Made by a program: the position numbers and the translations under genes. Below are positions 6,478 through 43,625 of a stretch of DNA of 64,000 nucleotides, one piece after another; the first letter of the stretch is position 1, and the number at the start of each line of letters is the position of its first letter. The notes under the pieces are model-generated. The model was not told the origin of the DNA, did no database searches, and saw only the letters and a list, made by a program, of their open reading frames with translations. This DNA comes from Mytilus californianus. Its lineage: Eukaryota. The stretch spans positions 96,038,001 to 96,102,000 of the forward strand of contig NW_026262734.1 in assembly GCF_021869535.1 (NCBI RefSeq), written 5' to 3'.

Positions 6478-6740
6478 AAAATTGAAAAAATCATGTACAT
6501 ACAAAATCTAAAGATCTTTCGGTCACCGATTTTCGGAGTGTTCCACGAAGTCCTTAGCATTTTACAATTTCCAGAAATATACTTATTTTTTACATTTAAG
6601 TATACGGGTACACCGGTCTGCTCTTGTCACTTGAACATTCAATATAAAATATTGTCTTTTCGAGATTATAACAATTTAAAAGTCTGTCAGTGCAGGTTCA
6701 AAAATTAAAGATAAATATTTTTATTAAGTAGGTATCTTTT
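6478..6740 (+). mobile_element. Dispersed repeat fragment (family K)
   Basis: Aligns by eye in reverse orientation to 38555-38815 (caaaatctaaagatctttcg, caccggtctgctcttgtcac, aatttaaaagtctgtc). Confidence 0.7.
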
Positions 6741-34149: not shown

Positions 34150-34745
34150 ATAAAATTGAGAATGAAAACGGGGAACGTGTCAAAGGAACAACAACCCGAC
34201 TAAAGAGCAGAAAACAGCCGAATGCCACCAACCGGTCTTCAACACAGTGAGAAAATCCCGCATCCGGAGGAGGGTTCCAGCTGGCCCCCAAACAAAAATA
34301 TGCACTAGTTCAGTGAAAATGGACGTCATACTTAACTCCAAAATATATAAATGAACTAAAATTAAAAAAGATACAAGACTAACAAAGGCCAGAGGCTCCT
34401 GACTTGGAACAGGCGAGAAAATGCGGCGGGGTTAAACATGTTTTGTGAGATCTCAACCCTCCCCCTATACCTTTAGCCAATGTAGAAAAAACAAACACAC
34501 AGCAATACGTACAGTAAAAATCAGTTTAAAAGAAGTCCAAGTCCGATGTCAGAATAGGTAACAAAAGAAGCTAAGCAAAATGACAATGCTACATAAATTA
34601 ACAAAGGACTACTAGCATTTACTGACATGCCAGCTCAGATCTCAATTAAACTGATTGAAAGATTATGTCTTCATCATATGAAAAGCAAGCACAATCCCTT
34701 GCGTTAGGGGTTCAGTATCATACCATTATAAAATATATGAGAAGA
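34150..34745 (-). mobile_element. Dispersed repeat family A, long copy
   Basis: Matches 18325-18672 and 24596-24870 and extends further. Confidence 0.85.
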
Positions 34746-34802
34746 ACATAACGTCATGTCACATGAAAAAAAACATCTACTTGAGGTATATAACTAAGAA
34801 AT

Positions 34803-34945
34803 AACAGTACTGTAGTTGAAGAGTACTATACTTGACCGTCTCAAATTTCCGTTTTACTGTCTCCGCTATGCGTCGCCAGTAAAACTGAATTTGCGGACAT
34901 CAAATCGCCAATTGACGGTGGCAACTCTTCAACTACAGTACTGTT
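34803..34945. mobile_element. Short hairpin element with 22-bp terminal inverted repeats
   Basis: aacagtactgtagttgaagagt (34803-34824) / actcttcaactacagtactgtt (34924-34945). Confidence 0.8.
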
Positions 34946-35169
34946 GTTCCGATTCTAATGCATTACAAAAAGATATAATACGTTAGAGCTTGAAAAAATG
35001 TATAAATTTGAAATAAAATAAAATTCCGCGAAACTTCATATTAGATGATTTTGGCGCTTAAACGTCATGGCTAAACATGGATAAACTAAAGGTTATTACG
35101 TTACCTCTACGATTTAAATTTGGATAAACTCACATCAAAACGCCGATTTTGAGGTAGGTGTTGTTTATT

Positions 35170-36337
35170 TTATTAAAATCAATCGGGTCCAGGACCAATC
35201 TAGTATATCTTATTATAATCCTTCGTAATTAATTCCATTTTTTATATGCATACATTTAGATTAATTTAGAGCTGGTATACTCAGTGTATGATAAATATTT
35301 CTTGTTGTGAAATACATTTTGCAGCATTTATTTCCATATTTTTGAAGAAATTCACACTTGTATCCTTGTAGTATAATTATTGTCTGCGTGTTTCTAGAAT
35401 ACAAGTCCAGATCTGGTCTGTGTTTCTAATACTAAAAGAGGTGTTTCGGTTATGGTCATGTAGACCTAGGCCTATCCTCATCAGGTATCCCTAGCCTATA
35501 TGTTTCCTTTCTTGTAATATTTAGAAGTGTTCGAATTTGATTTCACTTATGGGGATACGACCTCTGTGTATACGTTCGTTTCTTATTTTTCTTCTTTCTG
35601 TTTTTGGGTATTTTTTTCTTTTGTTTTAATCTCTTCTATTAGTTTATTGTGCCTGATATTTTTTATCTTTTCGTTGATTTTATCTGTTTATATCATTTTT
35701 CATCTTTAAATTCGTTAAATACTCTTTTAGATTTGTATGTCTTTTGTATGCAAAACGTTTGCTCATTGCTAATAAATTTAATACTCTATTTGAGAGATTA
35801 AATATCTTATTTTGTTATTCTATTTGAGAACAACTTAATTTGAGAGATTATTTTATTTTTGGTATTCTATTTGAGAATAATTTAGATTAACAGTCTCTAT
35901 TTGAGAGATTGCTATATGTTGTTATTCTATTTGAGAATAACTTGACAATGTATTATCAGTCTCTATTTGACAGATGATTATTATTGTTGAAAAAAAAACA
36001 AAAAAAACCCAGTTTTTTCCTCCTATGTTATAGCGTTAAAATAGATCCTGCAATGTGTGATAGATAAATATGTGTATTTTATCAGTCAAATATTTCTATC
36101 TAATTGCTTCCACCTGATTACAATATCTCGTATGCTCATTGGTTAATTCTATATACGTCATAGATACATGCACGTGTATTTTTTACCTCACCTAACCTAA
36201 ATCCTGAATTGTTTACTATATCTTAAAATAGTTCAGGAGTGCCGTAACAGATACACATACTAATGTATTATATTCTTCTGGATCGATATTACTATTGAAA
36301 ATAAATGGAAAATCCTTTACATACATTGTACATACAT
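35170..36337 (-). mobile_element. Element H, copy 1 (~1.17 kb, non-coding, hammerhead-bearing)
   Basis: Reverse complement of 40621-41796 over its whole length, with scattered substitutions and indels. Confidence 0.9.
35437..35565 (-). ncRNA. Type III hammerhead ribozyme, stem III weakened by a 2-nt deletion
   Basis: Minus strand: GUC, stem I gtatccc/gggatac, CUGAUGA (35484-35478), GAAA (35447-35444), cacctct. The 5' strand of stem III reads agaggtc instead of (ag)aggtgtc. Confidence 0.65.
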
Positions 36338-36356
36338 TTTTTCTGTTTTGGGGTAT

Positions 36357-37937
36357 TTTTATGCCCCCGCCGTAGCGGAGGGGGCATTAAGTTTTACCCT
36401 TGTCCGTCTGTACGTACGTACGTACGTCCGTACGTCCCAAAATTGGTTTTTGTTCTCTAACATGAGTTTGCCTCAACCAAATGTTATGACACTTATACAC
36501 GATGCTAACTACCTTAAAACACAGATTAAGTTTGAATTTTGGTGGCGTCACTTCAACCGTTCTAGTCTAGAGTTATGCCCCTTTATAAATTGAAAAATTG
36601 CAAAAAATTTTGTTTCCGTTCTCTTTCTTAAGTTTGCTTCAACCAAGTGTTATGAAACTTATACACAATGCTTATTACCACAAAACACAGATCAAGTGTG
36701 AATTTTAGTGTCGTCACTTTAACCGTTCTTGAGTTATGCCACTTTATAAATGGAAAAATTGTAAAATTTTTAGTTTCCGTTCTCTTACTTAAGTTGCCTC
36801 AACCAAATGTTATGAAACTTATACACAATGCTTATTACCACAAAACACAGATCAAGTTTGAATTTTGGTGTCGTCATTTTAACCGTTCTAGAGTTATGCC
36901 CCTTTATAAATTGAAAAATTGCAAAATTTTTAGTTTCCGTTCTCTAACTTGAATTTGCCTCAACCAAATGTTATGAAACTTATACACAATGCTTATTATC
37001 ACAAAATACAGATCAAGTTCGAATTTTGGTAGCTTCACTCGAACCGTTCTAGAGTTATGCCCCTTCATAAATGGAAAAATTTTAAAATTTTTAGTTTCCG
37101 TTCTCTAACTTAAGTTTGCCTCAACCAAAGTTTATGAAACATATACACAATGCTTATTACCACAAAATAAAGATCAAGTTTGAATATTGGTGGGGGTCAC
37201 TTTTACTGTTCTAGAGTTATGCCACTTTATAAATGGAAAAATTGCAAAATTTTTATTTTCTACTAAATATCAATTTATTTTTAAAATTGGATTTATCTTC
37301 CTTTGTCCATGATTATAATTGAATCAACTACAATTAATGCTTTATACAATGCAATGTTTAATTTTGACTTCCACTGATAAAACACAGATCAAGTTGAATT
37401 TGGGTAGTGTCACTTTAACCATTATTGAGTTATGACCCTTTATAAATCGAAAGATTGCAAAATTTGTAGTTTCCATTCTGTTACTAAAGTTTGTTCCAAC
37501 CAAACATTATGAAACCTATACACAATATTCATTACCACAAAACTAAGATCAAGTACAAATTTTTTGTTTCGGTTTTCGAACTTTAGTTTGCCTCAACCAA
37601 ATGTTATGAAACTTATACACAATGCTTATTACTACATAATACAGATTAAGTACAAAATTTGGTGAGAACACTTTTACCATTCTTGAGTTATGTCCCTTTA
37701 TAAACATAAAAATTGCTGAATTTTTAGTTTCCGTTCTCTAACTTTAGTTTGTCTCAACCAAATGTTATAAAACTTATACACAACCGTTCTAAAGTTATGC
37801 GTGTTTACAAATAGAAAAATTGCTGAATTTTTAGTTTCTACTTAAGTTAGCCTCAACCAAATGTTATGAGACTTACACACAATGCTTATTACCACAAAAC
37901 TCAGATCAAGTTCAAATTTGGGTAGCGTCACTTTTAT
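36357..37937 (+). mobile_element. HINE element with expanded ~161-bp array (3' end missing)
   Basis: 5' atgcccccgccgtagcggagggggca stem-loop, (GTAC/GTCC)n, units anchored at 36471, 36637, 36797, 36958 and 37119. Confidence 0.9.
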
Positions 37938-37944
37938 ATCTTCT

Positions 37945-37976
<32 letters not shown>

Positions 37977-38554
37977 GAGTCTTTGAACAGTGCTAACAAG
38001 TGGGAAATCTAGTGACAAAATATTACCTCCCCTGAAAATATTGAAAACTAAATCTTCTCAATGTTTGTCCCATTATAGCAAAGACGCTATCAATTATGGA
38101 TTCACGAGAAAATGTTCTGGTAAATAGTAAAAATAGAAATAAGTTGAAATAAAAACAAAACTTACATTCAACGTTATCATTTCCCTCCTTAAGTAGCAAA
38201 CAACGAGTACAGCAGGCTATAGGAGCTTGATGTAAACTTGGTTTAAAATGTTGCTATGCGAATATATTCCTGGAGTACCAACTTCAATATATTTTTCTAC
38301 TGGCTATAAACCTTTCTGTAACATGCTAATTATCCGAATATATATACAGCTAGAGCAGAGAAAGTTTGGGAAAAAATTCCAAAGGAATCGATTGATATAC
38401 AGCAAAGATTGGCACTTTTGAAATTAAGTTACTAAGAAAATTCAAACGGACCTTATCGCGATGTAAACATTTAATGTGAATAGACGGAAAAGACCGCAAA
38501 TACATGTACAAAAATCGAGACGACCTTTTCTTAAAATTGTACAAAAAATAGTAG

Positions 38555-38815
38555 AAAGATGCCTACTTTATAAAAACATTTATCTTTGATTTCTTAACCA
38601 GCGCAGACAGACTTTTAAATTTTTAAATTCACAAAAAGAATATTTCTCTACTGAATGTACATGTGACAAGAGCAGACCGGTGTGCTCGATAACTAAGGTG
38701 TGAAAAAATAAGTATACTTTGGGAACTTGTAACATGCTAAGGACTTTTTGGAACACTCCGAAAATTGGTGACCCGAAAGATCTTTAGATTTTGTATGTTC
38801 ATGATTTTTTCCAAT
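38555..38815 (-). mobile_element. Dispersed repeat fragment (family K)
   Basis: Reverse match to 6478-6740. Confidence 0.7.
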
Positions 38816-38816
38816 T

Positions 38817-39988
38817 TTTATGCCCCCGCCGTAGCGGTTGGGGCATTAAGTTTTACCCTTGTCCGTCCGTACGTACGTACGTCCCAAAATTGGTTTCCGT
38901 TCTCTAACTTGAGTTTGCTTCGACCAAATGATATGAAACTTATAGACAATGCTTATTACCACAAAACACAGAATAAGTTTGAATTTTGGTGGCGTCACTT
39001 AAACCGTTCTAGAGTTATGCCCCTTTATAAATGGAAAAATTGTAAAATTGCTAGTTTCCTTTCTCTAACTTAAGTTTGCCTCAACCAAATATTATGAAAC
39101 TTATACACACTGCTTATAACCACAAAATAAAGATCAAGTTTGAATTTTGGTGGCATCACTTTAACAGTTCTAGAGTTATGCCCTTTATAAATGGAAAAAT
39201 TGCAAAATTTTTATTTTCTTCTAAATATCAAGTAATTTTTAAAATTTGAGTTATCTTCCTTTGTCCATGATTATAGTTCAATCAACTACACTCAATGCTT
39301 TATACAATGCAATGTATAATTTTGACTTCCACTGATAAAACACAGATCAAGTTGAATTTGGGTAGTGTCACTTTAACCATTATTGAGTTATGCCCCTTTA
39401 TAAATCGAAAGATTGCAAAATTTTTAGTTTCCATTCTGTAACTTAAGTTTGCCCAAACCAAACATTATGAAACCTATACAAAATATTCATTACCACAAAA
39501 CTAAGATTAAGTACAAATTTTTGTTTCCGTTTTCTAACTTTAGTTTGCCTCAACCAAATGTTATGAACCTTATACACAATGCTTATTACTACATAGTACA
39601 GATTAAGTACAAAATTTGGTGGCGACACTTTTACCATTCTTGAGTGATGTCCCTTTATAAACATAAAAATTGCTGAATTTTTCGTTTCCGTTCTCTGACT
39701 TTAGTTTGTCGCAACCAAATGTTATAAAACTTATACACAACTGTTCTAGAGTTATGCGTGTTTACAAATAGAAAAATTGTTGAATTTTTAGTTTCTGTTC
39801 TCTACTTAAGTTAGCCTCAACCAAATGTTATGAGACTTACACACAATGCTTATTACTACAAAACTCAGATCAAGTTCAAATTTGGGTAGCGTCACTTTTA
39901 CCGTTCTTCAGTTATGTCCCTTTATAACTATATGATATGCAAGCAGGGGCATCATCTGTGTCCACATGTGGTCACTATCCACATTTAT
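38817..39988 (+). mobile_element. Complete HINE element, same family as 36357-37937
   Basis: 5' atgcccccgc, 3' inverted gcaggggcat at 39943-39952, terminal hairpin, fewer tandem units. Confidence 0.9.
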
Positions 39989-39989
39989 T

Positions 39990-40095
39990 TCTTTTGTTTT
40001 AAACTCTTCTATTAGTTTATTGTGCTTGATATATTCATCTTTTGTTTGATTTTATCTGTTTATATCATTTTTCATCTTTAAATTCGTTAAATACT
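39990..40095 (-). mobile_element. Internal fragment of element H
   Basis: Matches 35617-35725 in the same orientation. Confidence 0.8.
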
Positions 40096-40620
40096 GTCTT
40101 GTTATTAACTAGACAATCTCCATATATGCTTATTATAACCCTTTCTCTAATTACTTAACAAAACCATGGTAAGGGACAAAAAACTGAAATATAGATTTGA
40201 AAAAGCTATATAGAACAACTCTTGACCAGAGGAAGGGACATTGAAACTACATTAAACAAATGAGAAAAGTAAAAGGGAAGATCAATAAATAAATTTACAA
40301 TGAAGTAACAAATAATTATGTCCGAAACAAATGTGCCAGATGAAAAGAAAATAGGAAGTACTAAACAGGATATGACAATTAAAGTCAAATGACAAGAAAT
40401 ACTAATTGCATCAACAGAATGTTATAAATTTCTAAACTTAGACAGATCAAATTTGATTCTCACGGGGATTCGACCACCTGTATATTCGACTGAAAAATAA
40501 TAGGTTTTTCTATCAAATACTAAACAAATGAAAAATACTAATTGACTATAACTATCAAACTATAATTCTATAACTGACCAGTAAATAATACTATTATTTT
40601 AATAGAGATACGAGATACAC

Positions 40621-41796
40621 ATATATATACAATGGATGTAAAGGATTTTCTATTTATTTTCATTGGTATTATCGATCCAGAAGAAGAACATAATACATTA
40701 GTATGTGTATCTGTTACGGCACTCCTGAACTATATTAAGATGTAGTAAACAATTCATGATTTAGGTTAGTTGAGGTCAAGAATGCACGTGCATGTATCTG
40801 TGACGTATATAGAATTAACCAATCAGCAAACGAGATCTTGTAATCACGTGGAAGCAATTAGATAGAAATATTTGACTGATAAAATACACATACTTATCTA
40901 TCACACCTTGCAGGATCTATTTTAACGCTATAACATAGGAAGAAAATCTGTTTTGTCTTTTTTTAAAAACAATAATAATCATCTGTCAAATAGAAATTGA
41001 TAATGCAAGTTATTCACAAATAGAATAACAACTTCTAGTAATCTCTCAAATAGAGACTGCTAATCTAGGTTATTCTCAAATAGAATACCAAAAATAAAGT
41101 AATCTCTCAAACAGAGACTGCTTAACTAAGTTGTTCTCAAATAAAATAACAAAATAAGATATTTAATCTCTCAAATAGAGTATTAAATTTATTAGCAATG
41201 AGCAAACGTTTTGCATACAAAAGACATACAAATCTAAAAGGGTATTTAACGAATTTAAAGATGAAAAATGATATAAACAGATAAAATCAAAGAAAAGATA
41301 AAAAAATATCAGGCACAATAAACTAATAGAAGAGATTAAAACAAAAGAAAAAAATACCCAAAAACAGAAAGAAGAAAAAGAAAGAAACGAATGTATAAAC
41401 AGGTGTCGTATCCCCATAGGTGAAATCAAATTCGAACTATTCTAAATATTACAAGAAAGGAAACATATAGGCTAGGGATACCTGATGAGGATAGGCCTAG
41501 GTCTACATGACCATAACCGAAACACCTCTTTTAGTATTAGAAACACTGACCAGATCGGGATTTCTATTCTAAAAATACGCACACAATACTTATACTACAA
41601 GCATGCAAATGTGAATTTCTTAAAAAATATGAAAATAAATGCTGGAAAATGTATTCCATAACAAAAAATATTTATCATACACTGAGTATACCAGCTCTAA
41701 ATTACTCTAAATGTATGCACATAGAAAATTGAATTAATTTCGAAGGATTGTAATACGAGATACTGGATTGGTCCTGGACCCGATTGATTTTAATAA
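40621..41796 (+). mobile_element. Element H, copy 2 (~1.17 kb, non-coding, hammerhead-bearing)
   Basis: Inverted counterpart of 35170-36337. Confidence 0.9.
41401..41527 (+). ncRNA. Type III hammerhead ribozyme, complete core
   Basis: Stem III aggtg(41401-05)/cacct(41523-27), GUC with cleavage after 41407, stem I gtatccc(41408-14)/gggatac(41475-81), CUGAUGA 41482-88, stem II closed by G41489-C41518, GAAA 41519-22. Confidence 0.85.
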
Positions 41797-43625
41797 TATT
41801 GTTTTATTTTCGATAATATTGTAGTAATCGAACATTTGTTGATCCAAGCAATTCAAAATGACGGGTCCCTCTTTAGTTACAGGATGTCAACTGTGGATTT
41901 GATGGTAACATTTGGCTAATGAAAAAAAATTTTACATAAAAATTGCATTAGAATAAAGTGTATATGATATGCCTTTTTCAATATCACACCCGTATCAATC
42001 CTCAATTAATATAATCTACCGAGCAGAGCGCTTTGGATTATATTGGGGGCATCTAATATTTTCTATTTATATTAAGTAATTTTTCTGGAGGTTATTTTTG
42101 CGTTTTGCAAACACAATGTTTGACACTGCCTTCCAGGATTTTATCTTCCAGAAGCACGACAATTTGTCATGTTTCTGTAATCCATCCAAGTCTATCTTTT
42201 TGACAGGATTTTGAATTAGGCTTGTTATAAAGCTGTCGTCTGACATATGCATGACATATTTGCAACTGTCAATCATTAGTTTAATCGGGAAAAATAAAAA
42301 TTCGAAAGTGACTTTTTTTATCTAACTATTCTAGAAACTAGGTGTGAGAAGACTGTCAGCGTGTTCCTTTTTGATTCGATTATTTTCAGAAATATATATA
42401 TAGTGTCTGTTTAAAACAATGACAATATGTAATCTCATTCTTACTTCATAATGATGTCATACAGACGTGATTCTTTTATGTTTTGAGTTAATTGCATTTA
42501 CAAAATACAAGAATTAATCACACTTAATTCGGTCAAATGAAAAAACATGCCATCATTCAAATGTTTATATTGAATTTAATTTGTCCAATTGCTGTTAGTT
42601 AAGACATTACTGAGATTTTGTTTATTAGTGGTGAAAATTGCAATAGAATATGTTTTACAAAATCAATCTTGATAAAGTTTTAATTGCGGTTTTTGTATGG
42701 AACATTTCCTAAAATCGTCATAAACAACATGAAATTATTGTCTGTTGTTCAACAATCACAATATGAATGTTGGCTGAGATTTATGAATATAAGTATCAGT
42801 GGAAAAACTATTACCAAATTTATTGTGATTTTTTTTATCCATTAGATATTCACGGCAATGGGTACAATTCATTACCACAACAGCTATTCAATTGCCAATT
42901 ACATGAACAACAGGAACATTCAGTACAAATCAAATGCCAGACGATTGACCAATGGGAACCCCCTTGATATTAACTTATGTTCGAACTCCGTAATGTACTC
43001 CTGACCTGTTACTTTCATGGTCAATATATTCAATCAATTACTTTATAATATGGATGAAATTTAGTATAAGTTTTTCAAACTTTATGATATCTATCTACAT
43101 ATAGCCAAGCAGTAAGTTTATTTCAGTAATGAAATATTGCGTCTATCGATTTTGTAAATCTTTAATCAATGCAAAAGAACCAACGAACCATCAAATTCAA
43201 AATCAAGGAAAAGTAACACTAAGAAACAAAAACCTACTGGTGTATCAAAGATTTCATTTTGAATATCTATGTGAGATAATAATTTTAATGTCTTAGTAGG
43301 GAATATTTGTCGCTTATTTATTGAAAACGATCTGATGTGGATAAATATCAATTGTACATTTTGGAAAATCTGGATTGTTTATAAAGTATCTAGCATCTGT
43401 GTATTTTGTTGCATTGTTAAAAAGATCTATAAAGTGAGGTTTTGTTGGGTTGCTCGAACGTTTCGTAGCTTTGATATGAATGCGGATTCATAACAGCATA
43501 AGTAAAAATTTGCAATAATGGGGCAGAATTTGTGAATAGCCAAATCAATCATAGGGTTTGGCGAATGAGTTCGAACCTTATTTTCTTAATAGCTTATTAC
43601 TGTATCAACAGATAATCTAAAACAG

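What the first reader, a model, noticed from the sequence alone, without database searches (positions are those of the whole stretch)
35170..41796. 1.17-kb hammerhead-bearing element forms an inverted pair around a 4.3-kb core
Seen in sequence: 35170-36337 and 40621-41796 are reverse complements along their full length, and both ribozymes point outward. Between them are two same-family HINEs, a family-K fragment and a third piece of the same element. Inference, three alternatives: long TIR arms of a foldback-type transposon that happen to carry a ribozyme; an inverted pseudo-LTR arrangement of the kind PLE-related elements produce; or two independent insertions. Opposed copies could also yield long dsRNA.
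Basis: partly seen in the sequence, partly recalled or inferred. Interest (0 to 1): 0.75.

Follow-up and report, generated by a model that had tools for sequence, protein, structure and literature searches.

The report
Inverted Penelope-like retroelement pair, one insertion
The inverted pair is real, but it is the usual head-to-head scar left by a single insertion of a non-coding, hammerhead-carrying Penelope-like retroelement in a mussel genome, later pushed apart by a rolling-circle transposon; the ribozyme it carries is well supported and of an unusual shape.

Summary
35167-36337 (-) and 40621-41799 (+) are 93% identical on aligned bases, and each carries a hammerhead motif pointing outward.

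The anatomy needs correcting:
- The right copy runs 528 bp further inward (40096-41796).
- The left copy is 5'-truncated.
- The "third piece" (36338-36360 plus 39986-40095) is one 133-bp inverted fragment. It was split by a single 3.6-kb composite HINE insertion.

The whole 6.6-kb structure sits in an older repeat. In nine of nine uninterrupted paralogues the two flanks overlap by 11 bp, so one target-site duplication flanks the whole structure. The arms are sister copies (100/99 support).

Across the genome the family has a fixed 3' end and variable 5' ends. Copies occur solo, in tandem, or head-to-head, never tail-to-tail. A longer relative encodes a Penelope-type reverse transcriptase.

This is therefore the known inverted pseudo-LTR arrangement of Penelope-like elements (PLEs). 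It is not a foldback transposon and not two independent insertions.

Extras:
- The hammerhead has type III topology and is conserved with covariation across reverse-transcriptase families down to 42% identity.
- Several copies begin exactly at its cleavage site.
- This reverse-transcriptase clade lacks the endonuclease.

No read data could be obtained. The scan had noted the same hammerhead before, on this window and on another piece of this genome.

The parts
35159..35169 (.). Left copy of the target-site duplication (about 11 bp, core TTGTTT), inside an older host repeat
   Evidence: In 9 of 9 paralogous host-repeat copies the left-flank and right-flank matches are contiguous. They overlap by 6 aligned bp, which is 11 bp when extrapolated to the junctions.
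35170..36337 (-). Copy L: 5'-truncated copy of the element (arm positions 1179 to 1), with its 3' end outward
   Evidence: It ends in the family's precise 3' terminus.
35433..35568 (-). Hammerhead of copy L. The core is intact, helix III has two mismatches, and the cleavage site would lie between 35559 and 35558.
   Evidence: (195.7 bits)
36338..36360 (-). Left part of the 133-bp inverted junction fragment (arm positions about 750 to 728)
   Evidence: Together with 39986-40095 it is contiguous with the element sequence, 95.3% and 94.5% identical to the two arms.
36361..39985 (+). Composite Helentron-type HINE insertion. It consists of HINE 1 lacking its right flank (to about 37940), filler with a T/G homopolymer and the 'family K' sequence (to 38813), and the complete HINE 2 (38814-39985). 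Ends are uncertain by about 4 nt.
   Evidence: 5' subTIR with complementary IR and a 4-nt microsatellite, about 160-bp tandem repeats, and only one 3' subTIR plus palindrome at 39946-39971. It sits in a T-run with no duplication. Features are as defined in PMC7492417.
39986..40095 (-). Right part of the 133-bp inverted junction fragment (to arm position 622), abutting the 5' end of copy R
   Evidence: (I6, I8, D8, D9)
40096..41796 (+). Copy R: the longer copy (arm positions -528 to 1176), non-coding, with internal 60-bp repeats at 40977-41154
   Evidence: Other genomic copies align continuously from -528 to 1176. There is no ORF of 100 aa or more. Precise 3' terminus.
41398..41533 (+). Hammerhead of copy R, type III topology. 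It has a 6-bp helix III, cleavage after C41407, a 7-bp helix I closed by a 60-nt loop, the CUGAUGA core, a 30-nt helix II and GAAA.
41797..41808 (.). Right copy of the target-site duplication

Best explanation
Window 35170-41796 is one old insertion of a non-autonomous Penelope-like retroelement (PLE) into a copy of an older repeat, in what is probably a Mytilus genome. The family is an internal-deletion derivative of an element that encodes a reverse transcriptase (RT), and it keeps that element's hammerhead-bearing 3' region.

Proposed mechanism: during integration, element RNA was reverse-transcribed from both sides of a staggered break. One cDNA gave copy R (40096-41796, + strand). The other, primed on the opposite strand, gave the 5'-truncated copy L (35170-36337, - strand). 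Both 3' ends therefore face outward and abut one 11-bp target duplication. The two 5' ends were joined through a 133-bp extra inverted piece, probably a template switch. Later a 3.6-kb composite Helentron-type HINE landed inside that piece and moved the arms 4.3 kb apart.

Shown here: the repeat, the true extents, the single target duplication and empty paralogous sites, the sister relation of the arms, the family-wide fixed 3' end with head-to-head or tandem partners, the PLE-type RT relative, and the conserved hammerhead.

Inferred: priming on both strands (by analogy with the Anolis PLE protein, which cleaves and extends both strands in vitro, PMC11167929), the template switch, and the order of events.
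For: - Inverted arms are 93.4% identical.
- Other copies extend 528 bp beyond the arm on the right side only.
- The junction fragment is contiguous once the HINE block is removed.
- The flanks belong to one repeat whose nine uninterrupted paralogues overlap by 11 bp at the site.
- The arms are sisters with 100/99 support and a shared branch of 0.027. The fragment is equally diverged from both arms.
- About 35 copy ends share the same 3' terminus, with no poly(A).
- Of about 24 sampled loci, 7-8 have a head-to-head inverted 5'-truncated partner, about 6 have a direct or tandem partner, none is tail-to-tail, and about 10 are solo.
- A relative on C46 carries the same non-coding segments plus ORFs with RVT_1 and PLE motifs.
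- Homologues at 30-36% identity carry RVT_1, DUF8422, HTH_animal and GIY-YIG.
- The literature describes exactly this layout: a full-length copy preceded by an inverted 5'-truncated copy, with the hammerhead in the pLTR (PMC8557442).
Against: - The RT clade that matches this family lacks the GIY-YIG endonuclease thought to make the staggered cut, so the cutting enzyme is unidentified.
- The paralogous empty sites are known from match coordinates only. Their letters could not be fetched.
- The two target-duplication copies differ by one substitution and one 1-nt indel.
- At one other locus (L003) a neighbouring cluster seems to be a separate insertion 38 bp away with its own 8-bp duplication. 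Adjacency alone therefore does not prove one event.
- At two other head-to-head loci the partners are not sister copies (L009/L023 on 586 bp; L007 on a short, poorly resolved region).
- No read or population data were available.
Confidence: 0.8

Rival explanations
1. Two events. A first insertion (junction fragment plus copy R) was later hit exactly at its 5' junction by a second, self-targeted insertion of a sister copy (copy L) that made no duplication of its own.
For: PLE endonucleases are reported to recognise PLE sequence (PMC11167929). Clustered separate insertions exist in this family (L003). At two other head-to-head loci the partners are not sister copies.
Against: It needs a blunt insertion precisely at the old junction, because no host DNA and no second duplication lie between the arms. 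The arms are each other's closest relatives, and all three pieces are equally diverged.
Confidence: 0.1
2. A solo insertion was followed by a DNA-level inverted duplication of its 3' 1.17 kb, for example by fork stalling and template switching or by break repair.
For: This would also give sister arms and equal divergence.
Against: It does not explain why the duplicated arm ends exactly at the element's 3' terminus next to a target duplication. It also does not explain why head-to-head partners recur at 7-8 of about 24 loci with different inner ends.
Confidence: 0.05
3. A foldback-type DNA transposon whose 1.17-kb terminal inverted repeats happen to carry a ribozyme.
For: Long inverted arms flanked by a short duplication.
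Against: Most copies are solo or tandem, with a fixed 3' end and variable 5' truncation. Inner arm ends differ at each locus. The right copy continues 528 bp past the arm, the 'core' is not conserved between loci, and the coding relative has a reverse transcriptase rather than a transposase.
Confidence: 0.02

Closest known systems
Penelope-like elements (PLEs): pseudo-LTR and inverted 5'-truncated upstream copy (Evgen'ev and Arkhipova 2005; Craig et al. 2021, PMC8557442)
   Same: Frequent 5' truncation, partial tandems, an inverted 5'-truncated copy next to the 5' end giving inverted repeats around the unit, a hammerhead in the repeated 3' region, and non-autonomous derivatives sharing the 3' end. 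The RT has the PLE N-terminal and RT motifs.
   Different: The matching RT clade (about 645-690 aa) stops just before the position where canonical PLEs carry GIY-YIG. The hammerhead is a stable monomeric type III form with a 60-100-nt loop 1, not the minimal type I variant reported for metazoan PLEs. A clear 30-40-bp 'tail' was not established.
Metazoan non-LTR retrozymes (Cervera and de la Pena 2020, PMC7229834; Li et al. 2026 preprint 10.64898/2026.07.22.740005)
   Same: Non-coding, AT-rich, hammerhead-bearing repeats found in tandem. They are thought to be non-autonomous PLE derivatives and are present in Mytilus.
   Different: The unit here is about 1.75 kb rather than 150-450 bp. The hammerhead is type III rather than type I. 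Most copies are dispersed 5'-truncated insertions. No circular RNA evidence was obtainable.
LINE-1 twin priming (inversion with deletion)
   Same: Two opposed cDNAs primed from the two strands of one staggered break, flanked by one duplication.
   Different: In twin priming the inverted segment comes from a more 5' part of one RNA, so the two parts do not overlap. Here both arms copy the same 3' 1.17 kb, as in PLEs.
HINE / Helentron non-autonomous elements of bivalves (Cg_HINE, PMC7492417; MgE of Mytilus)
   Same: The interior block has a 5' subTIR with complementary IR, a 4-nt microsatellite, about 160-bp tandem repeats and a 3' subTIR plus palindrome. It inserted into a T-run without a duplication.
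   Different: It is a composite of a 3'-truncated inner copy, about 870 bp of filler and a complete copy, moved or built as one block.

Membership tests
Penelope-like element (insertion architecture) | Fixed 3' end with variable 5' truncation | tested here: met
   About 35 copy ends share the same terminus. 5' starts are scattered from -528 to 1155.
Penelope-like element (insertion architecture) | Partial tandems (pLTR) and inverted 5'-truncated copy at the 5' end | tested here: met
   Tandem arrays on C13, with direct partners at L005 and L010. Head-to-head partners occur at the window, L003, L004, L007, L009, L014 and L019. None is tail-to-tail.
Penelope-like element (insertion architecture) | PLE-type reverse transcriptase in the autonomous partner | tested here: met
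   The C46 relative shares all non-coding segments and has ORFs with RVT_1 (E 3e-6) and PLE motifs. Atlas clusters carry DUF8422, HTH_animal and RVT_1. Homologues at 30-36% identity add PF01541.
Penelope-like element (canonical EN+ clades) | GIY-YIG endonuclease fused to the RT | tested here: not met
   ORFs of four families end just before the EN position. The tandem unit of the 68% family is 2.57 kb and holds only the RT ORF. Closest database relatives of about 645 aa lack PF01541.
Penelope-like element (insertion architecture) | Optional 30-40-bp 'tail' at one end | tested here: inconclusive
   Tandem units are joined by a constant 42-bp stretch that dispersed copies lack. Short duplicated 3'-terminal pieces occur at L007 and L028. 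No clear optional tail was defined.
Penelope-like element (insertion architecture) | Target-site duplication around the whole insertion unit | tested here: met
   An 11-bp overlap of the flanks in 9 of 9 uninterrupted paralogues. Duplications at solo copies were mostly unclear.
Hammerhead ribozyme, type III | Conserved core (CUGANGA, GAA, A15.1-U16.1, cleavage after GUH) | tested here: met
   Present in copy R and in most family copies, with scattered inactivating changes in single copies.
Hammerhead ribozyme, type III | Helices I, II and III supported by covariation, with helices I and II closed and III open | tested here: met
   Four different helix I sequences and three helix III variants keep pairing across RT families of 68% to 42% identity. 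93% of cells are paired against 28-47% when slid, and 13 of 21 pairs show double changes, with 0 of 500 shuffles as high (the alignment is model-fitted).
Hammerhead ribozyme, type III | Match to Rfam hammerhead models | tested here: not met
   No hit at gathering score or at E<=10. The likely cause is the 60-nt loop 1 and the long helix II.
Hammerhead ribozyme, type III | Self-cleavage | not testable with these tools
   Indirect evidence only. At least 5 copies of this family and 2 of the 68% family begin at or within a few nt of the predicted cleavage site.
Foldback / long-TIR DNA transposon | Same two terminal inverted repeats at every copy | tested here: not met
   Solo and tandem copies predominate, and inner ends of inverted partners differ.
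Metazoan non-LTR retrozyme | Short (150-450 bp) tandem units with a type I hammerhead, expressed as circular RNA | tested here: not met
   The unit is about 1.75 kb and the hammerhead has type III topology.
HINE (Helentron non-autonomous) | 5' subTIR plus IR plus microsatellite, tandem repeats, 3' subTIR plus palindrome, T-rich target and no duplication | tested here: met
   All features are seen in 36361-39985, judged against the definition in PMC7492417.

The most novel reading that the evidence does not exclude
The hammerhead of this PLE lineage is active in vivo and shapes integration. Self-cleaved RNA, whose 5' end is the nucleotide after the cleavage site, is copied to its very end. That 388-nt product is what often ends up as the inverted or tandem upstream partner. 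The same lineage has lost its endonuclease yet still inserts inside chromosomes with target duplications, presumably using an enzyme supplied in trans. If so, the long-unexplained role of PLE hammerheads would become testable, and there would be an endonuclease-free PLE clade that is not confined to chromosome ends.
Probability: 0.35. Interest if true: 0.7.

Novelty: new member of a known kind. Interest (0 to 1): 0.45.

Why it matters
The inverted pair itself is ordinary. It is a clean, datable example of the known PLE head-to-head insertion scar, with the rare bonus of paralogous empty sites that show one target duplication around the whole unit. It also shows how such scars mislead annotation, because they look like long-TIR transposons.

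The side results matter more.
- A monomeric type III hammerhead, with a covarying loop 1 to helix II pairing, is conserved behind the RT of many mussel PLE families.
- Copy 5' ends pile up at its cleavage site.
- The RT clade lacks an endonuclease.

Together these give a concrete system for asking what PLE hammerheads do. Published in vitro and RNA-seq work on an Anolis PLE found no evidence that cleavage is needed (PMC11167929).

Tried and rejected
- Rfam scans found no hammerhead. At E<=10 they gave only two chance-level hits: Diantho_3_UTR on the HINE head and DPB downstream of copy R at 42420-42509.
- Unconstrained folding of the hammerhead region is no better than shuffles (z = 0.35). The structure rests on comparison between families, not on energy.
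Nothing can therefore be said on expression, circular junctions, small RNAs, dsRNA or allelic empty sites.
- Target duplications at solo copies were mostly unclear with BLAST-defined 5' ends.
- A short-region tree (267 bp) was too poorly resolved to say whether partners at other head-to-head loci are sisters.
- A search aimed at more copies truncated at the cleavage site returned only full-length matches.
None of the sequences already held contains a paralogue.
- MAFFT misaligned helix I of the most distant families. I used a covariance model instead. That model missed the 49% family, which is documented by script only.
- Pfam and PDB sequence searches gave nothing beyond RVT_1 for the RT and nothing for the 330-aa ORF1.
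- An N-terminal endonuclease (Naiad type) was considered and rejected. The ORFs start with the canonical PLE N-terminal motif, and the 2.57-kb unit has no room for one.
Full report
**Observation.** The inverted repeat is real. The repeat finder links 35167-36337 with 40621-41799 through seven collinear inverted segments. A global alignment gives 1083 matches, 77 mismatches and 30 gap positions: 93.4% on aligned bases, 91.0% with gaps. The motif CUGAUGA...GAAA occurs only twice in the window, at 35444-35484 on the minus strand and 41482-41522 on the plus strand, so both point outward. Rfam finds no hammerhead at gathering score or at E<=10.

**True anatomy.** A search of the window's own genome (1.65 Gb) finds at least 57 matches among 431 candidates. 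When these loci are mapped onto the right arm with flanks, several copies align continuously from 528 bp upstream of the arm to its end (L005, L007, L010, L011, L018, L026).
- Copy R is therefore 40096-41796.
- Copy L (35170-36337) is a 5'-truncated copy.
- The "third piece" at 39986-40095 continues on the other side of the interior block. 36338-36360 plus 39986-40095 read as one 133-bp stretch of the element, arm positions about 750 to 622, inverted. It is 95.3% and 94.5% identical to the two arms.

Before the interior block arrived, the structure was copy L, then the 133-bp inverted fragment, then copy R, with nothing else between them. No ORF of 100 aa or more lies in the element.

**The interior block.** 36361-39985 has the parts that define bivalve HINEs (PMC7492417):
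- a 5' subterminal repeat with its complementary inverted repeat;
- a 4-nt microsatellite;
- about 160-bp tandem repeats;
- a 3' subterminal repeat followed by a palindrome.

It sits in a T-run without a duplication. Only one 3' end is present, at 39946-39971. The first HINE aligns to the second at 92.7% up to 37936 and then breaks off into a T/G homopolymer and about 870 bp of filler. The block is thus one composite with a 3'-truncated inner copy, as described for Helitron-like tandems, and a single later insertion.

**Family behaviour.** About 35 copy ends share one precise 3' terminus followed by unrelated DNA, with no poly(A). 5' ends are scattered. In tandem arrays on C13 the units are joined by a constant 42-bp stretch, giving a unit of about 1.75 kb. 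Among about 24 independent loci sampled with 1.5-kb flanks:
- 7-8 have an inverted 5'-truncated partner head-to-head with the main copy (window, L003, L004, L007, L009, L014, L019);
- about 6 have a direct or tandem partner;
- about 10 are solo;
- none is tail-to-tail.

The inner ends of the inverted partners differ: 1, 590, 788-790, 864, 1155. With a few hundred copies in 1.65 Gb, chance adjacency within 1.5 kb is expected in fewer than one copy per thousand. These are the published hallmarks of PLE insertions: a full-length copy preceded by a truncated copy, often with an inverted 5'-truncated copy at the 5' end (PMC8557442).

**One event or two.** Both flanks of the composite belong to one older repeat family (2888 and 1430 candidates). 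In nine paralogous copies the match to the left flank and the match to the right flank are contiguous on the same strand. They overlap by 6 aligned bases (TTGTTT), which is 11 bp once extended to the junctions. The loci are on C1, C88, C87, C13, C127, C143, C2, C99 and C35. In the window the two 11-bp copies are 35159-35169 and 41797-41808, and they differ by one substitution and one 1-nt indel. One target duplication therefore flanks the entire 6.6-kb structure, and there is no host DNA between the arms.

On 586 shared bases from 31 copies, the two arms are sisters with 100/99 support, a shared branch of 0.027 and tips of 0.026 and 0.042. The three pieces are about equally diverged. I read this as a single integration event (0.8). 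A second insertion aimed exactly at the old junction (0.1) or a DNA-level inverted duplication (0.05) cannot be fully excluded. At L003 a neighbouring cluster does look like a separate insertion with its own 8-bp duplication. At L009/L023 and L007 the head-to-head partners are not sisters.

**What moves it.** On C46 a longer relative carries the same non-coding segments (about 80% identical) interleaved with three ORFs on the same strand.
- The first is a 330-aa coiled-coil protein ending in an RGG stretch.
- The second and third (327 and 319 aa) together form a reverse transcriptase (RT). They show RVT_1 at E 3e-6, the PLE N-terminal motif, and the LPKIHK and PGRPIVS motifs (motif reading is from my own knowledge).

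The stop codon lies about 70 bp inside the shared hammerhead-bearing 3' region. The window's family is thus an internal-deletion derivative.

The RT belongs to a very large set in this genome (19,079 first-look candidates). Related families at 68% down to 36% identity often have open frames of 650-735 aa. All that I inspected end at the same point, just before where canonical PLEs continue into the GIY-YIG endonuclease. The 68% family has a 2.57-kb tandem unit with room for the RT alone.

In the large protein database the best hits are Mytilus galloprovincialis and M. edulis proteins (94-98%), so the genome is probably a Mytilus. Relatives of about 645 aa from Mytilus, Saccostrea and Pinctada lack PF01541. 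Relatives at 30-36% identity and 720-1045 aa carry RVT_1, DUF8422, HTH_animal and GIY-YIG (Atlas clusters agree). The RT is therefore of the PLE superfamily, in a clade without endonuclease. Which enzyme makes the staggered cut is unknown.

**The hammerhead.** In copy R the order is:
- helix III 5' strand;
- GUC with cleavage after C41407;
- a 7-bp helix I closed by a 60-nt loop;
- CUGAUGA;
- a 30-nt helix II;
- GAA;
- helix III 3' strand (6 bp).

This is type III topology. Within the family the 160-nt region is 92-96% identical while the rest of the element is 82-88%.

The same architecture sits about 190 nt behind the RT stop in families at 68%, 63%, 58%, 49% and 42% RT identity. Loop 1 there is unrelated in sequence and 60-103 nt long. 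Helix I takes four different sequences, helix III three, and helix II several, all keeping their pairing.

A covariance model built from the family recovers the 68%, 63%, 58% and 42% families. On that alignment 93% of cells pair, against 28-47% when the partner is slid. Thirteen of 21 pairs show changes on both sides, and 0 of 500 shuffles reach that value. The alignment is fitted to the model, which favours the structure.

A five-base pairing between the 3' end of loop 1 and the inner loop of helix II is complete in all six families and changes wholesale in the 42% family. I chose these strands by eye, so this is a proposal.

Copy L keeps the core but has two mismatches in helix III. Other families in the genome carry ordinary type I hammerheads (L066, L071, L075).

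The literature I could read reports minimal type I variants for metazoan PLEs and type III mainly for plants (PMC4209133; PMC7229834). This form is therefore an unusual variant.

**Copies that start at the cleavage site.**
- Inverted partner at L004: begins exactly with the nucleotide after the cleavage site.
- The piece at L045:9729: also begins exactly there.
- L019: begins 1 nt later.
- L007: begins 2 nt later.
- L046:4377: begins a few nucleotides in.
- Two copies of the 68% family (L054, L055): begin exactly there.

With about 38 sampled 5' ends over about 1700 positions, roughly 0.07 would be expected in a 3-nt window. This is indirect evidence that self-cleaved RNA exists in vivo and is reverse-transcribed to its end. 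Most of these copies are the upstream partners of head-to-head or tandem pairs. None of the pieces in the window itself starts there.

**Mechanism.** The best reading is PLE-type target-primed reverse transcription on both strands of one staggered break. The purified Anolis PLE protein cleaves and extends both strands and starts reverse transcription inside the RNA rather than at its end (PMC11167929). This fits opposed cDNAs whose 3' ends abut the duplication and a precise internal 3' terminus without poly(A). The 133-bp fragment is most simply a template switch at the point where the two cDNAs met. These steps are inferred.

**Comparison and novelty.** As an arrangement this is already described for PLEs. 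The family is a new, non-autonomous member in a mussel. Features that differ from the canonical picture are the missing endonuclease in the matching RT clade, the monomeric type III hammerhead with a long loop 1 and a likely tertiary pairing, and the 5' ends at the cleavage site. It differs from metazoan retrozymes in unit size (1.75 kb against 150-450 bp) and hammerhead type. It differs from LINE-1 twin priming because both arms copy the same 3' region.

**Not done.** The scan had already noted this hammerhead on this window (s1-318083) and a similar one behind an RT elsewhere in the genome (s1-318123).

Noticed in passing
L053:475-2442; L045:3908-5884; L068:13-318; genome-wide: A very large set of PLE-type RT genes (19,079 first-look candidates) whose 640-735-aa ORFs all stop just before the position of the GIY-YIG endonuclease. 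The closest database relatives, from Mytilus, Saccostrea and Pinctada, also lack it, while relatives at 30-36% identity have it. Copies are interstitial, and the window's insertion has a target duplication.
   Followed up: partly
L004:3444; L045:9729; L019:1488; L007:3366; L046:4377; L054 and L055 (68% family): 5' ends of copies coincide with the predicted hammerhead cleavage site, exactly or within a few nt. Most are the inverted or tandem upstream partner. This is indirect evidence for self-cleavage in vivo.
   Followed up: partly
window 41469-41473 with 41494-41498; equivalent positions in L053, L072, L057, L062, L065: A five-base pairing between the 3' end of loop 1 and the inner loop of helix II is kept in six families and is replaced wholesale in the most distant one. 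It is a likely tertiary contact of the ribozyme.
   Followed up: partly
window 34790-35169 and 41797-41960: The insertion sits in an older repeat of about 550 bp with thousands of copies. Part of it (query positions 231-381) matches the paralogues on both strands, so it has an internal inverted repeat and may be a MITE.
   Followed up: no
window 34571-34752: A separate 182-bp repeat, 95-96% identical at more than ten other loci, lies just upstream of the host repeat.
   Followed up: no
window 37941-38813: Between the two HINEs there is a T run followed by a long G run, then about 780 bp of unrelated sequence. Its last 256 bp have an 84% inverted copy at window 6485-6739.
   Followed up: no
L045:7300-8292 (-): The RT-bearing relative has an upstream 330-aa ORF with a long coiled-coil-like stretch and an RGG-rich C-terminus. 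It has no Pfam or PDB match and may be a nucleic-acid-binding ORF1.
   Followed up: partly
L003:2857-2894: At C154:58.37 Mb a main copy seems to have its own 8-bp duplication. A second cluster of element pieces lies 38 bp away, so some adjacent copies come from separate, clustered insertions.
   Followed up: partly
L066, L071, L075: More distant RT families of the same superfamily carry ordinary type I hammerheads directly behind the RT. Both topologies therefore coexist within one RT superfamily in one genome.
   Followed up: no
window 36358-36534 (-): A weak Rfam match to a Dianthovirus 3'UTR model (22.9 bits, threshold 100) falls on the HINE head with its GC-rich hairpin. I take it as chance.
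   Followed up: yes
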